Positions 205 through 14,183 of a DNA stretch of 64,000 nucleotides are shown in pieces. Made by a program: the position numbers and the translations under genes. The DNA lies in the IMG/VR virus record IMGVR_UViG_3300019776_000324, positions 124,001-188,000 of that record. One strand, given 5' to 3'. The notes beneath the pieces were generated by a model. That model did no database searches, had not been told where the DNA came from, and worked only from the letters and a program-made list of their open reading frames with translations. The first letter of the stretch is position 1. The number at the start of each line of letters is the position of its first letter.

Positions 205-708
205 ATGACAAAAAAATTAGAAGAAATTTTTGGTTTTAACGAGTTAGAAACAGAAGACACTGTGTCCGATGATGCTCCTAAAACCACGGAAGAAACTAAA
301 ACAGCCATAGTAGAAATTGATGCTACTATTGATAAAATTGATGCAGCTCTACCAGCTATCCGTGACTTAGATGCTAGTGATAACGAGCTAGACGAAATAG
401 CCGAAATGGCCAAAGAAAGCTACCAAAATTTATCAGATCTAGGATTCAATGTTGATAGTCGTTATGCTAGCGAGTTATTTGCTGTAGCAAGCACCATGCT
501 TGGACATGCACTAACAGCCAAGACTACTAAACTAAACAAAAAATTAAAAATGCTTGATCTACAAATGAAAAAACTTAAATTGGATCAAGATGCGGCAAAA
601 AATGCTCCAGAAGAGCCTCCTGTAGGCGAAGGACGAGTATTAAACACTATGAATCGCAATGAATTACTAGAACGCTTAATTGGGTCAAGAGACCAAAAAA
701 ACAATTAA
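205..708 (+). CDS. Helical protein, possible terminase small subunit (gp16-like)
   Basis: 167 aa, coiled-coil, ELFAVASTML..ALTAK segment; head/packaging neighbourhood; function weakly supported. Confidence 0.35.
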   Translation: MTKKLEEIFGFNELETEDTVSDDAPKTTEETKTAIVEIDATIDKIDAALPAIRDLDASDNELDEIAEMAKESYQNLSDLGFNVDSRYASELFAVASTMLGHALTAKTTKLNKKLKMLDLQMKKLKLDQDAAKNAPEEPPVGEGRVLNTMNRNELLERLIGSRDQKNN

Positions 709-734: not shown

Positions 735-1343
735 ATGAAAAATTTTAAAGACTACCTCACCGAATCCGAGCGCACTTACAACTACAGAATTAAACTTGTA
801 GGTGACATACCTTCTACTCTTATTAAAGATTTAGAAGGTAAACTAAAGCAATTTGACATTGTCAAGATTTCTGCTCCAAAGACTACACCAGTTCAAACTA
901 ATCCTGCAGATTTTCCTGCATTTTCAAATGAGCGTGTAACACATGTGGATGTAGAATTCCGCTATCCAGCAATTGAACCACAAATTCAACAAATTGTACA
1001 ATTGTTAGGAGTTGATCCTAATTGTGTGCGTATGTTGACAACACCATACGAAGAAGGTATGAATGTTGAGCGTGACAAGATTGAAGATCAAAACAAAGAT
1101 TTGTTAGCTGATACAGATTACCCTGCACCAGATGCAGAACAAAAAGCTCTCAGCAAAGACTACTCAGCTGATCCATATCAGCATGCTGTATTGAAAAATG
1201 CTTACAAGAGTGACTTTACTGTAGCTGGTGGAAAGACACCTGCTGCACAAACAACAAACGATTTGCCAATGGGTAATACTAGTCCAATGACAAAGATGAC
1301 CCGCAAACCAAAACCAGCTACTGGTGCAAACCCAAAAGGATAA
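735..1343 (+). CDS. Hypothetical virion/internal head protein
   Basis: N-terminus MKNFKDYLTE resembles the T4 capsid-targeting sequence; TAAATA at 712-717. Confidence 0.45.
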   Translation: MKNFKDYLTESERTYNYRIKLVGDIPSTLIKDLEGKLKQFDIVKISAPKTTPVQTNPADFPAFSNERVTHVDVEFRYPAIEPQIQQIVQLLGVDPNCVRMLTTPYEEGMNVERDKIEDQNKDLLADTDYPAPDAEQKALSKDYSADPYQHAVLKNAYKSDFTVAGGKTPAAQTTNDLPMGNTSPMTKMTRKPKPATGANPKG

Positions 1344-1347
1344 CAAA

Positions 1348-3405
1348 ATGAGTTTTTTTTACGACCTAAACAAAAGATTAGCCGCATTGGCTAGCAAGCA
1401 AGATCAGCAACTTACTGAAAGTAAGGCCGCTGTTGAAGAAAGCAAGTTCAGTAAACTTGCTAAAGAGATTGGTAAAAATCCAAAGGTTAAAAATCCTGCA
1501 GCAGTTGCAGCCACAATTGGTCGTGAAAAGGATGGTCAAAAGGCCATGACTGCCAAGGCAGTTGCTGGTAAGAAAAAAGCCAATGAAGAAGAATTAGATG
1601 AAGCTGGTTACTCTGCTAAAGCTGGCCGTGCTGGTAAAGACTTAGGCAAGCCAGGCAAGAACTTTGCTAAGATTGCCAAAGGTGCTGCTGAGCGTTATGG
1701 CTCTAAAGAAGCTGGCGAGCGAGTTGCAGGCGCAGTACTAAATAAACTCCGTCATCCAAAAGAAGACATTGCCGATGAAGGCAACGCATTCACAGGCCAA
1801 TTAGCTAAGACACCAAAAGGTGGCAAGTTCAAAGTAGGCAACAAAGAATTTACAGATACAAGTAGTATTGAAGAAAGTGCATGCCCAACATGCGACTGTG
1901 CTCCATGCAAGTGCAACGAAGGTAATGCATTTACCGGCGCATTGGCCAAGACACCAAAGGGTGGCAAGTTCAAAGTAGGCAACAAAGAATTTACAGACAA
2001 CAGCGACCTTGAAGAAGGCTATGCTGAAATGGATGCATGGTTAAAGAGCCGCGAAAAAGAAAAAGGCACTGGCAAGTTCGATGTTAAAGACACAGGCTAT
2101 TCTAAGCGTTATACTCGTAAAGAAGAGCCAGAAGCATCTGATGACGAAGTTAGCACAGAACCTAAGCGTCGTGGTCGTCCAAAGGGTGCACCAAAAGGTC
2201 CAGAGCGTGTAACAGCCAAGAGCTACAAATATAAAGCAGGTCGTCCTGCTAAGACCAACGAAGGCGATGTTACTATTACTGATCGTGGTGAGTACGATGA
2301 CGAAGCGGGGATGGCAAAGGACTCTTTACATACTATCATGCGCCATGCTAAAGAACTTGAAAATGCTTTACACAGCAACGAGAACTTGCCTGAGTGGGTA
2401 CAAGAAAAAATTGGACAGATCAAAGGTATGATGTCCAGCGTTACTGATTACATTATCAGCACACACGAGCGTGGCATTGAACAAGCCACAGGTAAAGAAA
2501 GTATCACTATGCCTGTAGCTGAAAAAGCTGTAAGCAAAGCTCAACAAAAATTTATGGGCATGGTTCATGCCGCACAAAAAGGTGAAAAGCCAGCTAGTAA
2601 AGAAGTTGCTAAGGTAGCTAAAGAAATGCCTAAGAAGGCAGCTAAAGACTTTGCTAGTACTAAGCACAAAGGTTTGCCAGCTCATGTAGAAGAAGAATCT
2701 ACTGAGAAGGAAGATACTAAAGCTGAAAAAGCTGGTAAAAAAGTAGCCAAAGATATTGAACACGACGAAGGTCACAAAGCCAAAGGCGATAACAAAGCTG
2801 AAAAAGCTGGTAAGAAAGTTACCAAAGACATTGAGTACGATGACAAAAAAGACAAAGAAGAAAAAGTTGACGAAACAACAGTTGCTGGATCAGTAGCAAC
2901 AGCAACTACCAGTGGTAAGTCTAACAAGGGTGGCATGCAGTTTGGCAAAGGTGTTTACGAAAGTTTAGACCGTCAGTTTAAACAAGCATTAACAGAAAGT
3001 ATTTCCGTTGAATCGACAATGGGCGAATGCGGTGAAGGCGAAATGTCTCCAAGCATCACTATTACTGCTGATGGCGAAGAAGCTGCTAAGTTAATGATGT
3101 TGTTAAAGTTAGCCGGACTTGAAGGTCAATCTCCTGCAACATGCCCAACATGCGGCAGCGCACCTTGTGCTTGTGCTGAAGTAGTCGATGAGAACAGTCC
3201 AAATTGGCCAACCAACACTGAAGTTGGCGGCAAGAATGATCCGACTCTATCAACTTATGCAGGTGGCCTGAACAAACCTAAGTCAACAGGACAAACAACA
3301 ACTCCAACATTAGGAAGCGCAGATGTTCGTCGCCAAGTAAGTATGGAAGAGTCAGTTAAACTTGAGCGTAGCTTGTTCAATACTTGGAAAAATTATAAAG
3401 GTTAA
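1348..3405 (+). CDS. Modular Lys/Glu-rich prohead-core/internal-head polyprotein-like protein
   Basis: Probable start ATG 1348 after AAGGA; duplicated modules, AT-hook-like KRRGRPK, many (L/I/V)xE sites. Confidence 0.55.
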   Translation: MSFFYDLNKRLAALASKQDQQLTESKAAVEESKFSKLAKEIGKNPKVKNPAAVAATIGREKDGQKAMTAKAVAGKKKANEEELDEAGYSAKAGRAGKDLGKPGKNFAKIAKGAAERYGSKEAGERVAGAVLNKLRHPKEDIADEGNAFTGQLAKTPKGGKFKVGNKEFTDTSSIEESACPTCDCAPCKCNEGNAFTGALAKTPKGGKFKVGNKEFTDNSDLEEGYAEMDAWLKSREKEKGTGKFDVKDTGYSKRYTRKEEPEASDDEVSTEPKRRGRPKGAPKGPERVTAKSYKYKAGRPAKTNEGDVTITDRGEYDDEAGMAKDSLHTIMRHAKELENALHSNENLPEWVQEKIGQIKGMMSSVTDYIISTHERGIEQATGKESITMPVAEKAVSKAQQKFMGMVHAAQKGEKPASKEVAKVAKEMPKKAAKDFASTKHKGLPAHVEEESTEKEDTKAEKAGKKVAKDIEHDEGHKAKGDNKAEKAGKKVTKDIEYDDKKDKEEKVDETTVAGSVATATTSGKSNKGGMQFGKGVYESLDRQFKQALTESISVESTMGECGEGEMSPSITITADGEEAAKLMMLLKLAGLEGQSPATCPTCGSAPCACAEVVDENSPNWPTNTEVGGKNDPTLSTYAGGLNKPKSTGQTTTPTLGSADVRRQVSMEESVKLERSLFNTWKNYKG
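1777..1997 (+). repeat. Intragenic direct repeat, about 80 bp x2 (1777-1856, 1918-1997)
   Basis: Both copies encode EGNAFTG(Q/A)LAKTPKGGKFKVGNKEFTD; offset 141 nt. Confidence 0.9.
2719..2844 (+). repeat. Intragenic direct repeat x2 (starts 2719, 2794)
   Basis: KAEKAGKKV(A/T)KDIE(H/Y)D(E/D) twice; offset 75 nt. Confidence 0.85.
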
Positions 3406-3410
3406 TTAAA

Positions 3411-3893
3411 ATGAGTCAAGCCAATGTCTACACCTCAGTTGCAAATGCAGTATGGTATACTGATAAGTGCGAAATTGTTACAGGTAGTACTGCTGTAACC
3501 TACAACATCTATGTTATGCAAGCCGGTAATCCTACTGTAGGCATTTTAGGTTCAGTATCTAGTGCTAGTAATGTAATGATTTCAACCAATGCTAGTCAAG
3601 AGTTAATTGGCGCAACATTTGCCACAGGTACTGGTGTTGCCAATACAGTTACAGTGATCAGTGCAGTTAACGGACAAAGTCTTGTTATGAGTGCTAATGC
3701 AACTGCAAATAGTACAGGCCCATATACTTTAACCACAGGCAATCAAGGCAATTTATACAGTGCCGCACCACAAGTGGCAGTAAATAGTCGCCAACAAATT
3801 TATGTTGGTGCTGGTAACAAGCTAACAATTACAGGTAGCAGTTTTACCGCCAGAGAACTCGGAACAGCTAGCTCGGCCACAGCAGGACATTAA
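3411..3893 (+). CDS. Small beta-rich structural protein
   Basis: 160 aa, rich in Ala/Thr/Ser/Gly/Asn, late operon. Confidence 0.45.
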   Translation: MSQANVYTSVANAVWYTDKCEIVTGSTAVTYNIYVMQAGNPTVGILGSVSSASNVMISTNASQELIGATFATGTGVANTVTVISAVNGQSLVMSANATANSTGPYTLTTGNQGNLYSAAPQVAVNSRQQIYVGAGNKLTITGSSFTARELGTASSATAGH

Positions 3894-3895
3894 TT

Positions 3896-4276
3896 GTGCG
3901 AGCTCGTGAGTTTATTGCCGAAGGTACTAGAGGCGGATCCAGATCCTCCGCTTCCCATGAGTTTGAACGAGCACATCCAGGACTACTAACTCCAGGCGGC
4001 CAAGGTGATGTTTACTGGGGCCGTTACTATGATCACTATCGTGTAAGCAGTCTAGCAGGTATGCATCCAGATGATATTGATGCAGTAGACGAAATTAGTT
4101 TCTTTGGTAATCTTCCTTTGTTTAGTGCTTATACCGAGTATGATCGCAAAAAACTAAAAGCGATTATGAAAAAACTCAAAATGAAACCGCAAGAAAAAAT
4201 TTCAAACGGTAGTCAAGAAACCGACAATACTAATGCAGTAAGTCCAGTAAAGTCGTTTAAAGGCTACAAACGCTAA
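3896..4276 (+). CDS. Putative internal head protein, paralog 1
   Basis: Starts MRAREFIAE, ends SPVKSFKGYKR. Confidence 0.55.
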   Translation: MRAREFIAEGTRGGSRSSASHEFERAHPGLLTPGGQGDVYWGRYYDHYRVSSLAGMHPDDIDAVDEISFFGNLPLFSAYTEYDRKKLKAIMKKLKMKPQEKISNGSQETDNTNAVSPVKSFKGYKR

Positions 4277-4277
4277 C

Positions 4278-5153
4278 ATGTGTGTCATTGTTGCCAAATA
4301 CTTTGATGGTATTGGTTGGGCCGGTGCTAAAAACAGAGACCGCAACTATACCCCTGTATTAGATTTTATTGAAGACGAACAAGATGGTGTAGATCGTATG
4401 ATGATGCACGATCGGATCACAGGGTATAAAGAAGGAATTAACAGTCGCGGCGTTAGTATATTAAACACAAGTTTAGATGTGTACGACGACGAAAGTGAAA
4501 TAGAAGCTGGTACAGCTAAAACTAGTCCCGATGGCAGAACCATTGCCGAAGCATTGTTGAAAGACACAGCTCAAGAAGCAGTTCAAGTAATTATTGATAG
4601 AAAAATGGGCGGTTGTACTATTGTATTTGATCGTGATAATCTGTTTTTAATTGAAGCCAGCGACTGGGATAGAAAAAAGCCCTACAGATATGTTGCTAAA
4701 CGAATCCCTAAAACAGAAACTTTAGCCAGAACCAATCACGGCATCTGGATACCTAATGCAGGCTATCAACGCAACCCTGAAAACAAAAGCCAAACACTAA
4801 GCAGAATTAGTAGCGAATCAAGATTAGCGCAAGCTGAAGCAGTGGTTACTGCTGCACAAGATCCAGAGGATTTAGTTGATGGATTATGTCAAGTCTACAT
4901 CAATGATCCACAGCTAAATATAATGCGTACCAGTACAGAACGAAAGAAAATGCGTACAACTAGTCAGCAGTTGTGTGTTCCTAAAGAGAGAACACTATAT
5001 TGCCGTCCAGTTAGTAGTCATTTAGAATTTGATTTTTGGTCACTTAATCGTCCTAATACCAATGTATGGGTTGAGATATTAAGTAACCGTGCTCTATGGC
5101 AGAACACCAAAGGTGATCCGCCATTTGGCCATATGAACATGAAAGATTATTAA
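4278..5153 (+). CDS. N-terminal-nucleophile (Ntn) cysteine hydrolase (C45/NRDE-like)
   Basis: Cys2 after Met, AKNRDR, EGIN..GV, RTNH motifs. Confidence 0.7.
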   Translation: MCVIVAKYFDGIGWAGAKNRDRNYTPVLDFIEDEQDGVDRMMMHDRITGYKEGINSRGVSILNTSLDVYDDESEIEAGTAKTSPDGRTIAEALLKDTAQEAVQVIIDRKMGGCTIVFDRDNLFLIEASDWDRKKPYRYVAKRIPKTETLARTNHGIWIPNAGYQRNPENKSQTLSRISSESRLAQAEAVVTAAQDPEDLVDGLCQVYINDPQLNIMRTSTERKKMRTTSQQLCVPKERTLYCRPVSSHLEFDFWSLNRPNTNVWVEILSNRALWQNTKGDPPFGHMNMKDY

Positions 5154-5551
5154 TGAGAGCAGTGGAATTTATTACCGAAGCAAAATATGGCAGTGCTGCC
5201 GATGTTCCGGCCAATGCTAAAAAATTGCCAAACCACCAAGCCACTGCTATCAAGGGTGCTATCAGCATGCCTGACATTAGTATGACCAAGCAAGGCGGCA
5301 GTCCTTATACACAATGGCGATTTGGTATTGCCATGGCCGGTGCACCTGACTATCCTACACCAGCTGCTGGCGCATTTGCCGGCGATCCACTGTTGGCAAC
5401 TTACAGCGATGCTGACTTAGAAATTATTAATTCAGCCGCTAAGATGGTTGGCGCAGGTGAAGTTAAAAAGCTCACTGATAATCGTAGTACTGAACACGAT
5501 GCAATTTATAAAACAAGTCCGGTTACTGCATTCAAAGGATACAAGCGATGA
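5153..5551 (+). CDS. Putative internal head protein, paralog 2
   Basis: Starts MRAVEFITE, core YTQWRFGIAMAGA, ends SPVTAFKGYKR. Confidence 0.55.
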   Translation: MRAVEFITEAKYGSAADVPANAKKLPNHQATAIKGAISMPDISMTKQGGSPYTQWRFGIAMAGAPDYPTPAAGAFAGDPLLATYSDADLEIINSAAKMVGAGEVKKLTDNRSTEHDAIYKTSPVTAFKGYKR

Positions 5552-5949
5552 GAGCCAAAGAATTTATTCGAGAAGACATTGACGGCCGAACAGGTTCGAT
5601 AACATTTGATGTAGCTCGTGCGTTGCCTGGTGCATTTAAGATTCCTGCACTTAAAAATCAAGATCCATATTTACAATATCGTTTTGGTGTGGCTATTGCT
5701 GGCGCCAAAGGGGCTGCTCAACGCAAAAAAGATGGCGTTCCGGCATTTGACGGCAAAGAAAGTCCGTTTGGCGAAAACGAAATAGTAGTAAGTTACGATC
5801 CGCATGTAGTGGATTATATACACGATGCTCTTAAGTCCATGGGCATGCCCCCTAGTGATGCTATTCAAGTAGGTTCAATGAAAAGCGAAGAAATGCCGGA
5901 AGTAGTAAAAGTAAGCCCAGTAAAGGCATTTAAAGGTTATTCAAGATAA
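5548..5949 (+). CDS. Putative internal head protein, paralog 3
   Basis: Starts MRAKEFIRE, core YLQYRFGVAIAGA, ends SPVKAFKGYSR. Confidence 0.55.
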   Translation: MRAKEFIREDIDGRTGSITFDVARALPGAFKIPALKNQDPYLQYRFGVAIAGAKGAAQRKKDGVPAFDGKESPFGENEIVVSYDPHVVDYIHDALKSMGMPPSDAIQVGSMKSEEMPEVVKVSPVKAFKGYSR

Positions 5950-5950
5950 A

Positions 5951-6661
5951 ATGAAAAAAATATTTGCAGTATTATTGTTTGCTCCACTTGTAGCACTAGC
6001 ACAAATCAACCAACAGTGTCCACAGTTTACAGCCAATGGCACACCACAATATCAAGCACAGCCAGGCGATCAAGAAATTTGCCATACAAACTATGCAGTA
6101 ATTCACAAGTGTAGTGTTAAGGCTCCGGTGGCAGTATTTGAACATTTAACAGTGGCCGCAATGACGGGCCCAAGCAAGCGTAAAGACAACTTCCGTCCTG
6201 ATCCACTGGTATATCCAGATTGCAGTGCTACCTTAGCTGACTATGCTACTGTAGGCCGCACACACGATCGTGGACATATGGCTCCTGCAGGTAACAACAC
6301 ACAGAATGATGCTATTATGTCAGAGTCATTCTTCCTGAGTAACATGGTAGCGCAAGTGGCCAACAACAATCGTGGCATTTGGAAGCAATTAGAAACTTGG
6401 GAGCGCCAATGGGCAGCTAATACAGGCACTGACTTTTACATTATCTCTGGTGGTATCTACGATCCAGGACATCCTGTAACTGGTAACGGCTTAGGTATCC
6501 CTACACGCTTATACAAGATCATTATTGAAAAGAACAGTAAGAATGTACAAGCATACCTAATGCCAAATGCTCCGCTACCTGTAGCAGATTTACCAAAATA
6601 TCAAACCACAATGACCGCTGTAGAACAAGCCACAGGCATGCGTTTTAATTTAGGGCAGTAA
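5951..6661 (+). CDS. DNA/RNA non-specific endonuclease (NucA/EndoG family) with signal peptide
   Basis: DRGHMAPA, SF.LSNM..Q...NRG.W..LE; N-terminal MKKIFAVLLFAPLVALA. Confidence 0.9.
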   Translation: MKKIFAVLLFAPLVALAQINQQCPQFTANGTPQYQAQPGDQEICHTNYAVIHKCSVKAPVAVFEHLTVAAMTGPSKRKDNFRPDPLVYPDCSATLADYATVGRTHDRGHMAPAGNNTQNDAIMSESFFLSNMVAQVANNNRGIWKQLETWERQWAANTGTDFYIISGGIYDPGHPVTGNGLGIPTRLYKIIIEKNSKNVQAYLMPNAPLPVADLPKYQTTMTAVEQATGMRFNLGQ

Positions 6662-6684: not shown

Positions 6685-8250
6685 ATGGCTCAAGATGTAT
6701 CAACCTTAATTAAAACACCGTATAAAAATACGGCATTTACTAACGAACAACTTGAAGAATTCTTAAGGTGCGCAGACCCTGATACGGGTCCTGAGTACTT
6801 TATGGATCATTTCTTTCACATACAACATCCTACTAAAGGTAAAATGTTGTATCATCCTTTTGAGTATCAAAAGAGACTGATTGATACCTATCACAAATAT
6901 CGTTTCAGCATATCAATGATGCCTCGACAAACAGGTAAGAGTACCAGTGCCGCAGGTTACTTGTTATGGTACGCGATGTTTGTGCCGGACAGTACTATTC
7001 TTATTGCTGCTCACAAGTACACAGGTTCTCAAGAGATCATGCAACGAATTAGATACGCATACGAACTATGCCCAGATCACATTCGTGCAGGCGTTACCAG
7101 TTACAACAAAGGTAACTTAGACTTTGAAAATGGTAGCCGTATTGTGTCAGCAACAACTACTGAAAACACAGGACGCGGTATGTCCATATCCTTACTCTAC
7201 GCTGACGAGTTTGCATTCGTTCGTCCCGGTATTGCCAAAGAATTCTGGACTTCTATCAGCCCTACACTAGCAACTGGTGGTAAGGCAATTATTACAAGTA
7301 CACCAAACAGTGACGAAGATCAATTTGCGTTGTTGTGGAAGGGTGCTCTCAAGTGCGAAGATGAGTACGGTAATCCTACAGAAGTAGGCGTCAACGGATT
7401 TAAGTCTTATCGTAGTTACTGGAACGAACATCCTGACCGCGACGAAGCATGGGCCACAGCACAACGAGCACAGCTAGGTGAAGATCGTTTCCGTCGTGAG
7501 ATGGGTTGCGAATTTATTATTAACGATGAAACACTTATTGCTCCTGCTAAGTTAATTGATTTGCAAGGACACGAGCCCTTGTATAAAACTGGGCAAGTGC
7601 GTTGGTATCAAAAGCCCAAAGAAGGGCGCACCTATGTAGTATCGTTGGACCCTAGTCTTGGCACAGGAGGTGATGCAGCTGCCATACAGGTATTTGAAGC
7701 CAATACAACAGAACAAGTAGCAGAGTGGCGTCATAATCGTACACCCATTCCAGAACAAATTAGAATTCTAGCAGACATCTGCAACCATATCAACGAAACA
7801 GTAAACGATATCAAAAGCATCTATTTCAGCGTGGAAAATAACACCATTGGTGAAGCAGCCTTGATCAGTATTGCTGAATACGGCGAAGAAAACATCAAGG
7901 GCTATTTCCTAAGCGAACCAAACGGTGGCGGCAGTCGTAGATATCGCAAAGGTTTTAATACCAGCAACAAGCCCAAACTATCAGCTTGTAATAAACTTAA
8001 AACTTTGATAGAATCTGGAAAAATGAAAATTCGTAGCGCAGGGCTTGTTTCAGAGCTTAAAACTTTTGTAGCAAGCGGAGCTGGATTTGCCGCTAAACCT
8101 GGCGAAACTGACGACTTAGTAATGGCCACTGTACTAAACATCCGTATGCTACAACTGCTACAAACTTACGATACTGGCATTGATAATCAAATGCGAGATC
8201 ACGGGGATATTATAATTGCCCCGATGCCGTTCATATCAGTAATGCGCTAA
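6685..8250 (+). CDS. terL: Terminase large subunit (T4 gp17-like)
   Basis: PRQTGKS Walker A, YADEFAF Walker B, ITSTPN, nuclease DPS.G.GGD and DDLVMA. Confidence 0.95.
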   Translation: MAQDVSTLIKTPYKNTAFTNEQLEEFLRCADPDTGPEYFMDHFFHIQHPTKGKMLYHPFEYQKRLIDTYHKYRFSISMMPRQTGKSTSAAGYLLWYAMFVPDSTILIAAHKYTGSQEIMQRIRYAYELCPDHIRAGVTSYNKGNLDFENGSRIVSATTTENTGRGMSISLLYADEFAFVRPGIAKEFWTSISPTLATGGKAIITSTPNSDEDQFALLWKGALKCEDEYGNPTEVGVNGFKSYRSYWNEHPDRDEAWATAQRAQLGEDRFRREMGCEFIINDETLIAPAKLIDLQGHEPLYKTGQVRWYQKPKEGRTYVVSLDPSLGTGGDAAAIQVFEANTTEQVAEWRHNRTPIPEQIRILADICNHINETVNDIKSIYFSVENNTIGEAALISIAEYGEENIKGYFLSEPNGGGSRRYRKGFNTSNKPKLSACNKLKTLIESGKMKIRSAGLVSELKTFVASGAGFAAKPGETDDLVMATVLNIRMLQLLQTYDTGIDNQMRDHGDIIIAPMPFISVMR

Positions 8251-10445: not shown

Positions 10446-11441
10446 ATGGCATCATTAGCAGAAATTCGCGCTCGTCTAGCCGCTAGCGAATCAAAACAAG
10501 GCGGTAGTAATCAATCCACAGGTGGTGATAACGCAATTTACCCACATTGGAATATGGAAGAAGGTCAAGCAGCAACACTTCGATTCCTCCCAGATGGTAA
10601 TACAAAAAATACATTCTTTTGGCAAGAACGCCAAATGATTCGCTTACCATTCAATGGTATCAAAGGCGAAATGGATTCAAAACAAGTTTATGTACAAGTA
10701 CCTTGTGTGGAAATGTGGCAAGAGACTTGCCCAGTCCTTACAGAAGTGCGTGGCTGGTTTAAAGACAAGAGCTTGGAAGAAATGGGTCGTAAGTACTGGA
10801 AAAAGCGTAGTTACATTTTCCAAGGGTTTGTTCGTGAGAACCCACTTGGCGACGACAGAACTCCGGCTAATCCAATTCGTCGTTTCATCATTGGTCCTCA
10901 AATCTTTACTACTATCAAATCAGCATTAATGGATCCAGAGTTGGAAGAATTGCCAACAGACTTAATGCGTGGTTTAGATTTCCGTATCACCAAAGGTGCC
11001 AAAGGTGGCTTTGCTGACTACAGCGGATCTAAGTGGGCCCGTAAAGAAACAGCACTTACAGAAGCTGAACAAGCAGCTATCGCTGAACATGGTTTGTTTG
11101 ATCTTTCAACATTCTTACCTAAGAAACCAACCGAAGCAGAAGTTCGAGTAATTAAAGAAATGTTCGAAGCTTCAGTTGACGGTCAGAGTTATGATACAGA
11201 TCGTTGGGGTCAATACTTCCGTCCAGCTGGTGTTAGTGCTCCTGCTGGCTCTAGTGCTCCGGCAACAGAAAGTGCTCCAGCACCACAAGTATCTGCTCCA
11301 GCACCGGTAGCAACATCAAGTGATTTTGATGATGAAGAACCAGCTGTAGCAACTGCTCCTGTAGCAACTCCAGCAAGTGGCGAACCTAAACAAAATGCTC
11401 AAGACATTTTGGCTATGATTCGTAGTCGTCAAAAGCAGTAA
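10446..11441 (+). CDS. gp32: Single-stranded DNA-binding protein (T4 gp32-like)
   Basis: LRFLPD, CPV, YWKKRSY, G.DF.I.K, Y..SKW, acidic/Pro-Ala tail; upstream of uvsX. Confidence 0.85.
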   Translation: MASLAEIRARLAASESKQGGSNQSTGGDNAIYPHWNMEEGQAATLRFLPDGNTKNTFFWQERQMIRLPFNGIKGEMDSKQVYVQVPCVEMWQETCPVLTEVRGWFKDKSLEEMGRKYWKKRSYIFQGFVRENPLGDDRTPANPIRRFIIGPQIFTTIKSALMDPELEELPTDLMRGLDFRITKGAKGGFADYSGSKWARKETALTEAEQAAIAEHGLFDLSTFLPKKPTEAEVRVIKEMFEASVDGQSYDTDRWGQYFRPAGVSAPAGSSAPATESAPAPQVSAPAPVATSSDFDDEEPAVATAPVATPASGEPKQNAQDILAMIRSRQKQ

Positions 11442-11447
11442 TAAAAA

Positions 11448-11471
11448 TAGTCTAGGGGAAACCCTAGACTA
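11448..11471. terminator. 10-bp GAAA-tetraloop hairpin after gp32
   Basis: TAGTCTAGGG-GAAA-CCCTAGACTA; no U-tract on plus, T-run on minus. Confidence 0.55.
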
Positions 11472-11489
11472 CTAACTTACTATATAATA

Positions 11490-12398
11490 ATGAAATTTTC
11501 TTTGGTGTTTGATAATTCAGGTGATACCTTGCCCTTCGAGGTTGTGTATAACCACGAGTTATTTGAGTTCTTTGTAAATCAGTCTAACGCAGATTCACAA
11601 AACTCTTTTTCAAATCGTCAAGCATTGTTCAATGACATTGATAAAAAGATCACACACTTACATTGGGCAATATCAAAAACCAACGAAGTGTTATATTCTT
11701 TGATAGGCAAATCATTTGATCAACAAACAAACTTAGAAAAATATTTAAACCAAGATTTTTTAAATAAAACACATTGTGATTGGGTCTTTTCACAACTCAA
11801 TACTGTTGATATTGATAAACTCAGGTTTAACAGCAATTCTAAAATTGCTTCTCTCGGTTGGCAGTTACATGAGATGTATCCAGACGAAATTCGCATTGTT
11901 AAGACTAGCGAAATTTTAGAAAAGTTAGGATATATCTATCCATACGAAGAGGTAAATTTAGGAGTACATAGATTAGAATCAGCATTTAATAAATCAAATT
12001 TAGAATTTAGTGCCGACAATAAGTGGAAAGTTTTTCCAAATCCGTTTAAGGACACAATGGTTAGTAACAACAGCATTGTTAATTTTTCATTCGGTTACAC
12101 TTATGTTGGTAGACAGTACTACAACAAGTTTGAATACTTCGATGACAAGTTAACCTATGGCGATCACTACAATTATGAAAATTTAGAATTTTCATTCCAA
12201 CTAAATTTGCAAAAGGCTCAAACAATTGATTTCAGCCCAGAAGCAAAAAAGTGGGCGCAGGAAAAAAACATTCCATTGATTGCTACTCAAGTACCTATTG
12301 CTAATATACCAAATCTAACAGAAAATTTATTTGAATATAGAAAAGTTTTATATAGAAATTCTCGAGATAATAATCGAGCTCGCATTGTTTTAAACTAA
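11490..12398 (+). CDS. Hypothetical protein, distant paralog of 22075-22875
   Basis: 302 aa, AT-rich; shared N..H, H..E and (V/L)G(R/K) segments. Confidence 0.6.
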   Translation: MKFSLVFDNSGDTLPFEVVYNHELFEFFVNQSNADSQNSFSNRQALFNDIDKKITHLHWAISKTNEVLYSLIGKSFDQQTNLEKYLNQDFLNKTHCDWVFSQLNTVDIDKLRFNSNSKIASLGWQLHEMYPDEIRIVKTSEILEKLGYIYPYEEVNLGVHRLESAFNKSNLEFSADNKWKVFPNPFKDTMVSNNSIVNFSFGYTYVGRQYYNKFEYFDDKLTYGDHYNYENLEFSFQLNLQKAQTIDFSPEAKKWAQEKNIPLIATQVPIANIPNLTENLFEYRKVLYRNSRDNNRARIVLN

Positions 12399-12409
12399 AG
12401 AGGACTAAC

Positions 12410-13477
12410 ATGGGTAAACCATTTGATATATCAAAATTCCGCAAGGACATCACTAAGAGCATTGATGGTCTTAGTATTGGATTTAACGATCCAACAGACT
12501 GGATCAGCACAGGCAACTTTGCCTTGAACTATCTTATCTCAGGCGACTTTAACAAAGGCATACCACTTGGTAAGGTAACAGTATTTGCTGGCGAATCAGG
12601 CGCAGGTAAATCATACATCTGTTCTGGCAACATTGTCAAACATGCACAAGAGCAAGGCATCTTTGTTATCTTAGTTGACTCAGAAAACGCACTTGACGAA
12701 AAGTGGTTACACGCATTAGGTGTTGATACAAGCGATAGCAAGTTGCTTAAACTTAACATGGCCATGATTGACGATGTAGCTAAAACTATTAGTACATTTA
12801 TGACAGACTACAAAGCACTACCAGATGGCGAGCGCATGAAAGTCCTGTTTGTTATTGACTCATTGGGTATGTTGTTGACTCCGACTGACATGAATCAGTT
12901 TGAAGCAGGTGATTTGAAAGGTGACATGGGTCGTAAACCTAAGGCACTTACAGCACTTGTTCGTAACTGTGTAAACATGTTTGGTAGTTACAATGTAGGC
13001 ATGGTATGTACAAACCACACATACGCTTCACAAGATATGTTCGATCCAGATGACAAGATCTCAGGTGGACAAGGCTTTATCTACGCATCAAGTATCGTAG
13101 TAGCTATGAAGAAAATGAAGCTGAAAGAAGATGAAGATGGCAACAAAGTATCCGAAGTAAACGGTATCCGTGCTGGTTGTAAGATTATGAAAACACGCTA
13201 TGCTAAACCGTTTGAAGGCGTACAAGTTAAGATTCCTTATGCAACAGGTATGAGTCCATACTCAGGCATGGTAGACTTGTCCGAGAAAAAGGGCTTGCTT
13301 AAGAAAGAAGGCAACAGTTTAGTTTACACAACACTTGATGGCGAAATCATTAAACAGTTCCGTAAAAAGTGGGAAGCCAACGAAGATGGTTGCTTAGATA
13401 CAATTATTTCTGAGTTCGGTAAACACCCAATTGAGTCAGTAGAACTAAGTACTGAAGACACAGACTCGGAGGAATAA
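12410..13477 (+). CDS. uvsX: RecA-like recombinase UvsX
   Basis: AGESGAGKS, DSENA, VIDSLG, TNHTY, SGG.G..YASS. Confidence 0.93.
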   Translation: MGKPFDISKFRKDITKSIDGLSIGFNDPTDWISTGNFALNYLISGDFNKGIPLGKVTVFAGESGAGKSYICSGNIVKHAQEQGIFVILVDSENALDEKWLHALGVDTSDSKLLKLNMAMIDDVAKTISTFMTDYKALPDGERMKVLFVIDSLGMLLTPTDMNQFEAGDLKGDMGRKPKALTALVRNCVNMFGSYNVGMVCTNHTYASQDMFDPDDKISGGQGFIYASSIVVAMKKMKLKEDEDGNKVSEVNGIRAGCKIMKTRYAKPFEGVQVKIPYATGMSPYSGMVDLSEKKGLLKKEGNSLVYTTLDGEIIKQFRKKWEANEDGCLDTIISEFGKHPIESVELSTEDTDSEE

Positions 13478-13479
13478 GA

Positions 13480-13731
13480 ATGTCAGTAGAATTAAGCAAA
13501 GAAATTTGGGACGAACTCAAGCGTTATGTTAATACAGTAGATCGTGATGAAGCAGCAGAAACATTGGTTTCTGTATTGATCGATAATGATGCAGATGCAG
13601 ATGATATTAAATCTGTGTTTAAAAGTGATAGCGAAGTTAAGCGAGCTCTTGCAAGTTATCTCAAAGATCACGAGGATGAAGAAGACGAAGAGGACGAAGA
13701 TGATGATTATGAAGAGGACGACGACTATTAA
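13480..13731 (+). CDS. Small acidic hypothetical protein
   Basis: 83 aa with D/E tail, between uvsX and uvsY. Confidence 0.65.
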   Translation: MSVELSKEIWDELKRYVNTVDRDEAAETLVSVLIDNDADADDIKSVFKSDSEVKRALASYLKDHEDEEDEEDEDDDYEEDDDY

Positions 13732-14183
13732 TGTGGTATAGTCGTGTCACTTCTGATCTTAGTGCAATTCCAGATTTTATTGCACATTATGAACACGAAC
13801 TCGAATCTGCTAAAGCTGAATGTCGTGTGGGCGGCCGTATTGAAAAAAATATAGCCGCCTTGCCCGGCATCACTGAACACAGATTTAATCAACTTCAAGA
13901 AATCGAAGCAATTCTAAACTATCTTAATATTCAATTAAGAAAAATCCGACGAAAATATTTTCAAAAGTATTTAGAAGGATATGCTCGTGCATTAACTAGT
14001 CGTGATGCAGAGAAGTATGTTGATGGAGAAGACGAAGTCATTGACTTTGAAACACTAGTTAACGAAGTAGCGTTGTTGCGTAACAAATATCTTGGTATCA
14101 TGAAAGGTCTAGATGCTAAGAGTTGGCAAATGGGCCATATTGTTCGATTGCGCACAGCTGGTATGGAAGATATACAAATTTAA
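13731..14183 (+). CDS. uvsY: Recombination mediator UvsY
   Basis: Helical; AEKYVDGE, K.LD.K.WQ.G.IV.LR; next to uvsX. Confidence 0.75.
   Translation: MWYSRVTSDLSAIPDFIAHYEHELESAKAECRVGGRIEKNIAALPGITEHRFNQLQEIEAILNYLNIQLRKIRRKYFQKYLEGYARALTSRDAEKYVDGEDEVIDFETLVNEVALLRNKYLGIMKGLDAKSWQMGHIVRLRTAGMEDIQI

What the first reader, a model, noticed from the sequence alone, without database searches (positions are those of the whole stretch)
1348..3405. Cassette-like polyprotein of short basic modules separated by xxE sites
Seen: discrete modules each begin right after an (L/I/V/x)xE site (QLTE, VEE, LDE, ADE, IEE, CNE, LEE, TNE, VAE, VEE, VDE, LTE, VDE, MEE). Two modules are duplicated at DNA level, a CPTC..APC.C.E motif occurs twice, and there is an AT-hook-like KRRGRPK and a KDFASTKHKGLP module. 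Established: T4 gp21 cleaves core proteins after (L/I)xE. Inference: one gene delivers a dozen or more small DNA-binding or anti-host peptides into the capsid, with modules gained and lost by recombination.
Basis: partly seen in the sequence, partly recalled or inferred. Interest (0 to 1): 0.65.

Follow-up and report, generated by a model that had tools for sequence, protein, structure and literature searches.

The report
Jumbo-phage capsid cargo polyprotein
A 685-residue gene of an uncultured 344-kb freshwater-type jumbo phage looks like a string of small interchangeable protein cassettes, separated by the cutting sites of the phage's own T4-type head protease. It is probably a single precursor that loads a dozen or so mini-proteins into the capsid, though no cleavage has been measured.

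Summary
Window 1348-3405 (+) is one 685-aa ORF with the reported DNA-level duplications, two Cys motifs, an AT-hook-like GRP core and a true DUF3008 module.

The number of xxE sites in this one sequence is not above chance. Comparison with homologues is what makes the case:
- About 5,000 metagenomic homologues share a fixed N-terminal leader and C-terminal third. The interior is a variable cassette set, with 106 architectures among 120 proteins.
- Ten to twelve [LIVM]-x-E sites are conserved, at 61-100% of 89 aligned sequences.
- Inserted cassettes are bounded on both sides by such sites 36 times more often than in controls.
- The genome encodes a T4 gp21-family (S77) prohead protease.
- Neighbouring genes begin with T4-like capsid-targeting sequences.
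- Three modules recur in other settings. One stands alone behind such a targeting sequence. One follows [LIVM]xE in many unrelated small proteins, including one at the gp67/68 position of a T4-like phage. One is a virion protein of a cyanophage identified by mass spectrometry.
- The positional counterpart in phage PA5oct is a virion protein.

Best reading: a capsid-targeted polyprotein cut by the prohead protease into roughly 13-15 peptides. Cleavage, capsid location, DNA binding and any anti-host role are all inferred. I rate it a new variant of a known kind.

The parts
1348..3405 (+). Whole ORF, 685 aa: the proposed cargo polyprotein
1348..1419 (+). Conserved N-terminal leader (aa 1-24). It is a predicted helix, contains a scaffold-tail-like DLNKRLAAL, and ends in the conserved site LTE (E24, 97%).
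1420..1602 (+). Variable basic cassette (aa 25-85, pI 9.5), predicted disordered. It is present in only 6 of 120 homologues and ends at LDE.
1603..1779 (+). 'YSAK' two-helix module (aa 86-144). It also occurs in 71 unrelated small proteins, and 56 of these have [LIVM]xE just upstream.
1777..1875 (+). GNAF module copy 1 (helix plus beta-hairpins, pLDDT up to 94), ending IEE. One arm of the 99-nt direct repeat.
1876..1920 (+). Cys-rich 15-aa knuckle 1 (CPxCxCxPCxC), ending at the conserved Glu E191
1918..2016 (+). GNAF module copy 2, ending at LEE (E223, 98% conserved). Relatives' contigs skip exactly this unit (joint 1913->2014).
2017..2262 (+). Basic module (aa 224-305, pI 9.7): helix plus hairpin, then a disordered AT-hook-like stretch. 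The invariant GRP lies at nt 2173-2181.
2263..2523 (+). Acidic helical-hairpin module (aa 306-392), ending VAE (E392, 85%). Elsewhere it is a standalone 129-152 aa protein behind a T4-like capsid-targeting sequence.
2524..2694 (+). DUF3008 module (aa 393-449), ending VEE. Standalone homologues exist in cyanomyoviruses.
2695..2874 (+). Charged disordered module with the 56-nt tandem duplication (2713-2768 and 2788-2843), ending VDE (E509, 100%)
2875..3027 (+). Three short conserved pieces bounded by VYE538, LTE550 (both 100%) and MGE560 (74%)
3028..3192 (+). Most invariant part of the protein (aa 561-615). It holds a helix with LLKLAGLE, like the scaffold C-terminal tail, then Cys knuckle 2 (nt 3142-3180), and ends VDE (E615, 100%).
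3193..3351 (+). Conserved disordered segment (aa 616-668), ending MEE (E668, 98%)
3352..3402 (+). Conserved C-terminal helix ending ..WKNYKG. This C-terminal motif occurs in only six head-associated ORFs of the genome.
205..708 (+). Context: 167-aa protein, 37% identical to PA5oct gp283. By position and size it is probably the small terminase.
735..1343 (+). Context: homologue of PA5oct gp282 (a virion protein by MS). It starts MKNFKDYLTE and ends ..PKG.
3896..5949 (+). Context: cluster holding three paralogous small proteins (3896-4276, 5153-5551, 5548-5949) with T4-CTS-like N-termini, plus a 291-aa Ntn-hydrolase-like ORF
6685..8250 (+). Context: large terminase, 53% identical to that of PA5oct

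Best explanation
The gene encodes a capsid-internal cargo polyprotein of a PA5oct-related 344-kb jumbo myovirus. It sits in the head and packaging gene block, between a small-terminase-like gene and the large terminase.

**Proposed steps (all inferred).**
1. The precursor is built into the prohead core through its constant parts. These are an N-terminal helix and an internal helix that both resemble the conserved C-terminal tail of the phage's scaffolding protein, and a C-terminal helix ending in ..YKG.
2. The phage's T4 gp21-family serine protease cuts after Glu in hydrophobic-x-Glu motifs that lie in disordered linkers. There are at least ten conserved positions.
3. This releases about 13-15 peptides and mini-domains of 10-91 residues.
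4. Basic pieces stay with the packaged DNA and may enter the host with it. These are the YSAK module, the GRP/AT-hook piece and DUF3008. The leader and acidic pieces may leave the head.

**Shown here.** The cassette architecture, conservation of the sites, coincidence of cassette ends with sites, presence of the protease, and reuse of modules in capsid-targeted or virion proteins of other phages.

**Inferred.** Incorporation into the prohead, cleavage, retention of fragments, DNA binding and ejection.
For: **Genome and protease.**
- The genome encodes a Peptidase_S77 (T4 gp21) homologue at 82 bits, next to a scaffold and the major capsid protein.
- T4 gp21 cuts after L/I-x-E and chops core proteins into several fragments (PMC9026906).

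**Conserved sites.**
- [LIVM]xE is conserved at E24, E223, E392, E509, E538, E550, E615 and E668 in 85-100% of sequences, with P3 drifting among I, L, V and M.
- These sites lie in regions of low pLDDT between folded islands.

**Cassette boundaries.**
- Of 134 clean cassette insertions, 24 have such a site at both ends in the same register. That is 18%, against 0.5% in controls.
- Without conditioning on P3, 52 of 134 have Glu at both P1 positions (control 7%). Among these, P3 is LIVM in 50-56% (control 23%).

**Architecture.** There are 106 architectures among 120 homologues, with a constant leader and C-terminal third.

**Module reuse.**
- Module 306-392 occurs as standalone proteins that start MKxxEF[IL]xE. 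This closely resembles the T4 capsid-targeting sequence MKTYQEFIAE (PMC8442874).
- The YSAK module follows [LIVM]xE in 56 of 71 unrelated proteins. One of them lies between the portal and the protease of a T4-like contig.
- A standalone DUF3008 protein starts where this module starts, and it is a virion protein of cyanophage S-SCSM1 by mass spectrometry.

**Context.**
- Synteny with PA5oct places the gene at the position of gp281, a virion protein by ESI-MS/MS.
- Five ORFs of the genome carry CTS-like N-termini, three of them just downstream.
- The scaffold tail motif is conserved in four jumbo phages and is echoed in the target.
Against: - There are no proteomic or biochemical data for this phage or for any member of the family.
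- The motif count in the single sequence is at chance level.
- About 40% of insertion events show no site at either end within 3 residues. Part of this is alignment slack.
- Some conserved [LIVM]xE motifs (LPE349, VQE353) lie inside a predicted helix and are probably not cut. The motif alone therefore does not predict cleavage.
- There is no significant sequence homology to PA5oct gp281.
- The leader is not a T4-type 10-residue targeting sequence.
- The binding test of the LAGL segment against the capsid protein gave no answer.
- The AT-hook score is below the Pfam threshold.
Confidence: 0.55

Rival explanations
1. It is a prohead core or scaffold accessory protein, like T4 gp67, gp68 or gp22. 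It is incorporated and cut at the same sites, but the fragments are waste that leaves the head to make room for DNA. The cassettes would then be fast-evolving filler rather than functional cargo.
For: - T4 core proteins are cut into several fragments that mostly leave the head.
- About half of the protein is predicted to be disordered.
- The YSAK module rides on a protein at the gp67 position in a T4-like phage, with a weak GP67 hit of 14 bits.
- The scaffold-tail-like motifs suggest a role in the core.
Against: - Several modules are conserved, folded mini-domains that are kept as separate genes in other phages. One of them is found in mature virions.
- The invariant GRP core and the basic pI of several pieces fit retention on DNA.
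- A canonical scaffold and an acidic core protein already sit beside the protease.
Confidence: 0.22
2. It is an uncleaved, largely disordered multi-domain virion or packaging-associated protein. The Glu-rich boundaries would be flexible linkers, and short GAA-rich microhomologies would promote cassette exchange. The match to a protease motif would then be incidental.
For: - The motif count in the single sequence is at chance.
- P2 and P1' at cassette junctions are often Glu or Asp, so junctions are acidic runs that could serve as recombination microhomology.
- 40% of indels lack sites.
- N4 vRNAP and some polyvalent proteins are packaged uncut.
Against: - P3 is enriched for L/I/V/M two- to three-fold over control at junctions, and it drifts within that class at conserved sites. 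Microhomology does not explain this.
- Standalone genes begin exactly where the modules begin after the site.
- The same module follows [LIVM]xE in at least 25 different upstream contexts.
- The S77 protease is present.
Confidence: 0.15
3. It is an annotation or assembly artefact, or a chance ORF.
For: No tool result supports this. The sequence is from a metagenome.
Against: - There are about 5,000 homologues, many full length on contigs of 200-350 kb, with the same neighbours.
- The start, stop and both termini are conserved.
Confidence: 0.01

Closest known systems
T4 internal proteins IPI, IPII, IPIII and Alt (capsid-targeting sequence plus gp21 cleavage)
   Same: - Head-internal, often basic proteins loaded through an N-terminal propeptide that a gp21-type protease removes after hydrophobic-x-Glu.
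- The content varies fast between related phages.
- Genes beside the target, and standalone versions of one module, carry T4-like targeting sequences.
   Different: - T4 IPs are separate genes, each cut once (PMC8442874). Here about a dozen units are fused in one reading frame with a site after each.
- The leader is 24 residues long and is not similar to the T4 sequence.
T4 prohead core proteins gp22, gp67 and gp68
   Same: - gp21 cuts them at several L/I-x-E sites into small peptides.
- A protein at the gp67 position in a T4-like contig carries one of the same modules.
   Different: - The T4 proteins are small or coiled-coil proteins without interchangeable folded cassettes.
- The target is encoded beside the terminase, not beside the protease.
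- A separate canonical scaffold exists in this genome.
PA5oct gp281 (PQE65_gp281), structural protein found by ESI-MS/MS
   Same: - Same position, between the gp282 homologue and the large terminase.
- An N-terminal ..LRLAGV.. motif, internal ..LAG[IL].. motifs and a C-terminus ending ..KFKG.
   Different: - No significant sequence or profile similarity.
- Acidic rather than mixed in charge.
- Its processing has not been analysed in the paper.
Inner-body and ejection proteins of phiKZ, 201phi2-1 and SPN3US
   Same: Jumbo-phage head-internal proteins matured by a diverged gp21 homologue that cuts after Glu in a short motif.
   Different: - Different phage lineage and a different motif class.
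- Those are individual large proteins that lose propeptides, not a multi-cassette precursor.
Polyvalent proteins of phages and conjugative elements (Iyer et al. 2017, PMC5512222)
   Same: One polypeptide combines many units that vary between relatives. It is predicted to be packaged and delivered with the DNA, and then processed into separate units.
   Different: - Polyvalent proteins combine large enzymatic or anti-defence domains and usually carry their own embedded peptidase.
- Here the units are 10-90 residue mini-modules, no enzyme or peptidase domain is detected, and the cutting would be done in trans by the prohead protease.

Membership tests
Substrates of T4 gp21-type (Peptidase_S77) prohead protease | The phage encodes an S77 prohead protease | tested here: met
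   PF03420 scores 82 bits against a cut-off of 27 at G000:C1:89271-89714, flanked by the scaffold and the major capsid protein.
Substrates of T4 gp21-type (Peptidase_S77) prohead protease | Hydrophobic-x-Glu cleavage motifs at conserved, accessible positions | tested here: met
   Eight sites are 85-100% conserved as [LIVM]xE and lie in low-pLDDT linkers. V and M occur at P3 more often than in the T4 consensus of L/I.
Substrates of T4 gp21-type (Peptidase_S77) prohead protease | Cleavage after Glu demonstrated in proheads or virions | not testable with these tools
   No proteome exists for this uncultured phage. Supplementary Table S5 of the PA5oct paper, which gives band numbers, is not held.
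T4-type internal proteins with a capsid-targeting sequence | An N-terminal targeting sequence of about 10 residues resembling MKTYQEFIAE | tested here: not met
   The target's leader is a different sequence of 24 residues. The feature is met by the neighbouring ORFs at 3896, 5153 and 5548, and by standalone homologues of module 306-392.
DUF3008 (PF11450) | Score above the Pfam gathering threshold | tested here: met
   Residues 393-449 alone score 29.5 bits against 24. Within the whole protein the score is 21.7 bits. PHROG hits reach 5.7e-20.
AT-hook (PF02178) | GRP core flanked by basic residues, scoring above threshold | tested here: inconclusive
   13.2 bits against a cut-off of 17.4. G276, R277 and P278 are nevertheless invariant in 89 sequences.
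Polyvalent proteins (Iyer et al. 2017) | Several recognisable enzymatic or anti-defence domains and, typically, an embedded processing peptidase | tested here: not met
   Pfam and PHROG scans of the whole protein and of nine pieces find only DUF3008.
Scaffolding protein (T4 gp22-like) | A long coiled-coil protein encoded between the protease and the major capsid protein | tested here: not met
   That gene exists elsewhere in the genome (366 aa, G000:C1:89863-90963). The target shares only the short tail-like motif.
T4 gp67 (PF17634) | Match to the GP67 profile | tested here: not met
   The target has no hit. Only the module-sharing protein P0253 gives a weak hit of 14 bits against a cut-off of 27.

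The most novel reading that the evidence does not exclude
Hydrophobic-x-Glu prohead-protease sites may act as universal module boundaries in T4-type phages. Small cargo cassettes could then move between three carriers: a polyprotein (this family), gp67-like core proteins, and standalone genes with a capsid-targeting sequence. Environmental jumbo phages would in that case hold a fast-evolving, exchangeable arsenal of capsid-loaded, DNA-associated or injected peptides, produced from one precursor by the morphogenetic protease.
Probability: 0.3. Interest if true: 0.8.

Novelty: new variant of a known kind. Interest (0 to 1): 0.62.

Why it matters
Capsid-internal proteins are the first phage proteins to meet the host. 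In T4 they include an anti-restriction factor and an RNA-polymerase modifier, yet they remain poorly known outside a few model phages.

If this reading is right, one abundant family of about 5,000 metagenomic members would show a simple general way to load many small proteins into a head. The phage fuses them and lets the head protease separate them.

It would also give a sequence rule, [LIVM]xE-bounded cassettes within a constant frame, for finding such cargo in uncultured phages. It names concrete small modules (YSAK, GNAF, DUF3008, the GRP piece and the helical hairpin) whose functions can be tested. It may also be useful for engineering protein delivery by large phages.

Tried and rejected
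- **Megablast of the gene against 50,697 phage records:** no match.
- **tblastn against the same records:** only the DUF3008 piece matched, in cyanomyoviruses.
- **Pfam and PHROG scans of nine separate pieces:** nothing but DUF3008 and a sub-threshold AT-hook.
- **PDB sequence search:** nothing.
- **BLASTP and profile comparison with PA5oct gp281:** not significant. The best local match is the LAGL helix, E 0.27.
- **Motif enrichment in the single sequence:** not significant. I dropped it as an argument.
- **Histogram of pairwise-alignment breakpoints on the query alone:** too noisy to read. I replaced it with clustered clean insertions plus controls.
- **Free shuffling of module order:** rejected. 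Order is essentially colinear, and only the Cys knuckle occurs at two positions.
- **Complex prediction of the major capsid protein with residues 561-615:** no answer, score 0.00. This is evidence neither for nor against binding.
- **Fold search with the full-length model:** only generic helical hairpins for residues 312-385, Z at most 6.7.
- **PA5oct supplementary proteome table:** not held.
- **Sequencing runs:** only small shares from relatives and no RNA run, so there is no expression evidence.
- **Rak2-like Yersinia phage and the Vibrio phage:** no comparable gene directly upstream of the terminase.
- **The large all-against-all protein search:** not used, because no claim here rests on an absence of relatives.
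Full report
**What is there**

Window 1348-3405 (+) is a single ORF of 685 aa, 73.8 kDa, pI 8.5. It starts 4 nt after the stop of the upstream gene, behind an AAGGA box.

The window is part of a complete 344,244-bp virus record with direct terminal repeats. Three results place it among jumbo myoviruses related to PA5oct and Atu_ph07:
- Its large terminase is 53% identical to that of Pseudomonas phage PA5oct.
- Gene order around the target matches PA5oct. Window 205-708 corresponds to gp283 (37% identity) and 735-1343 to gp282.
- The target then sits where PA5oct has gp281, a 498-aa protein annotated as structural by ESI-MS/MS, followed by the terminase.

A 341-kb JGI contig shows the same order. 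Relatives, but not this phage itself, occur in freshwater, groundwater and lake metagenomes.

**Checking the observation**

- All three DNA-level duplications are present.
- The KDFASTKHKGLP stretch is the end of a genuine DUF3008 domain, at 29.5 bits against a cut-off of 24 when scanned alone.
- The GRP core of the AT-hook-like stretch is invariant in 89 homologues, but the Pfam score is below threshold.
- The number of hydrophobic-x-Glu motifs in this one sequence is not above chance. [LI]xE occurs 6 times against 5.1 expected, and [LIVM]xE 15 times against 10.4.

**Comparative evidence**

A word-based search found about 5,000 metagenomic homologues of 570-970 aa, many on contigs of 200-350 kb.

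*Architecture.*
- Homologues share an N-terminal leader that ends in a hydrophobic-x-Glu site, and a nearly identical C-terminus that follows an MEE site. The interior differs in cassette content.
- Splitting 120 homologues at [LIVM]xE and clustering the pieces gives 84 piece families and 106 distinct architectures.
- The constant frame is the leader, the AT-hook-bearing module and the C-terminal third. Accessory cassettes occur in 2-33 proteins each, and 31 are singletons.
- Order is essentially colinear. This is gain, loss and replacement in fixed slots, not free shuffling.

*Conserved sites.*
- In an 89-sequence alignment, [LIVM]xE is kept in 85-100% of sequences at E24, E223, E392, E509, E538, E550, E615 and E668.
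- It is kept in 61-74% at E85, E176, E449 and E560.
- P3 drifts among I, L, V and M. That pattern fits selection on a residue class rather than shared descent alone.

*Insertion boundaries.*
- I collected 134 non-redundant clean insertions of at least 12 aa with well-aligned flanks.
- 18% have such a site at both ends in the same register, against 0.5% for randomly placed segments of the same length.
- Without conditioning on P3, 39% have Glu at both P1 positions (control 7%). In those, P3 is L/I/V/M in 50-56% (control 23%, background 15.5%), and P1' is mostly G, E, S or A.
- BLAST segment ends between homologues are also enriched about 2.5-fold for Glu.

*Structure and DNA-level patchwork.*
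- The AlphaFold model (mean pLDDT 55) shows small folded islands separated by disordered linkers in which the conserved sites lie.
- Contigs of relatives laid on the gene match single modules. One joint (1913->2014) removes exactly the second GNAF unit.

**The protease and the targeting context**

- The genome encodes a T4 gp21-family protease (PF03420, 82 bits). It lies between an acidic core-like protein and a 366-aa coiled-coil scaffold, followed by the major capsid protein.
- T4 gp21 cuts after L/I-x-E. It removes the 10-residue capsid-targeting sequence of the internal proteins and chops the core proteins gp22, gp67 and gp68 into fragments (PMC9026906; PMC8442874).
- Five ORFs of this genome begin with a sequence very like the T4 targeting sequence. 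Three of them lie just downstream of the target.
- A C-terminal ..[F/Y/P]KG ending occurs in only six ORFs of the genome. These are the target, its upstream neighbour, the three paralogues and the acidic protein beside the protease.
- The scaffold ends in a tail motif (..L-K/R-R-L-A-G-I/L) that is conserved in this phage, PA5oct, Atu_ph07 and a Vibrio jumbo phage.
- The target carries a degenerate copy of this motif in its leader, and a nearly invariant copy (LLKLAGLE) in its most conserved segment.
- PA5oct gp281 and the small Atu_ph07 gene upstream of the terminase start with the same motif.
- I infer, but have not shown, that these motifs dock the precursor where the scaffold tail docks. 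A complex prediction gave no answer.

**Modules elsewhere**

- *DUF3008.* It exists as a 69-aa standalone gene in many cyanomyoviruses. In S-SCSM1 that protein starts within three residues of where the module starts after its site. It is annotated as a virion protein on the basis of mass spectrometry of CsCl-purified particles.
- *S-SCSM1 neighbour.* The neighbouring S-SCSM1 virion protein carries another cassette that is seen in family members.
- *Helical hairpin (306-392).* It occurs as standalone 129-152 aa proteins whose N-termini are T4-like targeting sequences, and the module follows directly after them.
- *YSAK module (86-144).* It occurs in 71 small proteins outside the family. In 56 of these a [LIVM]xE motif ends two or three residues before it, in at least 25 different upstream contexts. 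Three ORFs simply start there.
- *A T4-like carrier.* One YSAK carrier lies between the portal and the S77 protease of a 167-kb T4-like contig. From established T4 gene order (gp20, gp67, gp68, gp21) this is the position of the core proteins gp67 and gp68. It gives a weak, sub-threshold GP67 hit.

**Interpretation**

The best-supported reading is a capsid-targeted polyprotein that the prohead protease cuts into about 13-15 pieces (fragment table).

- Basic pieces (pI 9.5-9.9) are candidates for staying with the DNA. These are the YSAK and first GNAF piece, the GRP piece and DUF3008.
- Acidic pieces and the leader may leave the head.
- Every step from incorporation onward is inference.

Rivals:
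- Cleaved but discarded core filler.
- An uncut disordered protein whose acidic junctions reflect linkers or recombination microhomology.
- An artefact, which is excluded.

The P3 signature, the reuse of modules behind targeting sequences, and the standalone genes that start at the predicted cut all argue against the uncut reading. They do not prove cleavage.

**Comparison and novelty**

- T4 internal proteins, T4 core proteins, phiKZ and SPN3US head proteins, and polyvalent proteins each share part of the logic.
- The target fails the defining features of a T4-type targeting sequence, of polyvalent proteins (no enzymatic or peptidase domains) and of the scaffold.
- Literature searches found no description of a multi-cassette precursor of mini-proteins bounded by prohead-protease sites. 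The PA5oct paper does not analyse processing.
- I therefore rate it a new variant of a known kind, predicted from sequence only.

Noticed in passing
window 3896-4276, 5153-5551, 5548-5949; also G000:C1:278846-279397 and 279394-281385: A family of ORFs whose first nine residues (MRAxEF[I/V]xE) closely resemble the T4 capsid-targeting sequence MKTYQEFIAE. The three copies in the window also end ..FKGY[K/S]R. They are likely head-internal proteins. They have no Pfam or PHROG hits. The cluster is conserved, with a different copy number, in a related 341-kb contig.
   Followed up: partly
G000:C1:88386-89201, window 735-1343, 1348-3405, 3896-4276, 5153-5551, 5548-5949: A C-terminal ..[F/Y/P]KG ending (plus 0-3 residues) occurs in only these six ORFs of the 344-kb genome, and all six are head-associated. 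PA5oct gp281 also ends ..KFKG. This may be a shared docking or processing signal.
   Followed up: partly
G000:C1:89863-90963 (scaffold); L005:3459-4565; L009:301-1545; L010:301-1398: The scaffolding proteins of four distant jumbo phages (this one, PA5oct, Atu_ph07 and Vibrio 2.275.O) end in a conserved tail, ..L-K/R-R/K-L/I-A-G-I/L. The same short motif opens PA5oct gp281 and Atu_ph07 gp111, which both lie upstream of the terminase.
   Followed up: partly
window 4278-5153: A 291-aa ORF that starts Met-Cys, with a weak sub-threshold hit to the AAT / N-terminal-nucleophile hydrolase family (E 0.0025, 17.9 bits against 23.2). It is embedded among the putative internal-protein genes and may be a packaged enzyme.
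   Followed up: no
window 5951-6661: A DNA/RNA non-specific endonuclease (PF01223, 131 bits) with a signal-peptide-like N-terminus, immediately upstream of the large terminase. It is also present in the related contig L011.
   Followed up: no
window 3411-3893: A 160-aa ORF rich in S, T, A, G, N and V, directly after the target. It has no family hit and its position is conserved in the related contig L011.
   Followed up: no
L014:9001-9444 (ENA contig of 166.7 kb): In a T4-like phage contig, the gene between the portal and the S77 protease (the gp67/68 position) carries the same YSAK module as its C-terminal part, directly after an LEE site.
   Followed up: partly
L004:2493-4267 (Synechococcus phage S-SCSM1): [quoted passage not shown] One is a 69-aa DUF3008 protein. 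The other is a 520-aa Lys-rich protein that opens with a KPDFLDLDKDGNK.. module (a DxDxDG-like loop), which also occurs in family members P0024 and P0059.
   Followed up: partly
G000:C1:282320-296476 (minus strand, outside the window): A single ORF of 4,718 aa.
   Followed up: no
window 10446-14183: T4-type replication and recombination genes follow the head block: a gp32-like SSB (phrog_1192, 227 bits), a UvsX-like recombinase and a UvsY-like mediator. The order is the same as in PA5oct and the Yersinia jumbo phage.
   Followed up: no
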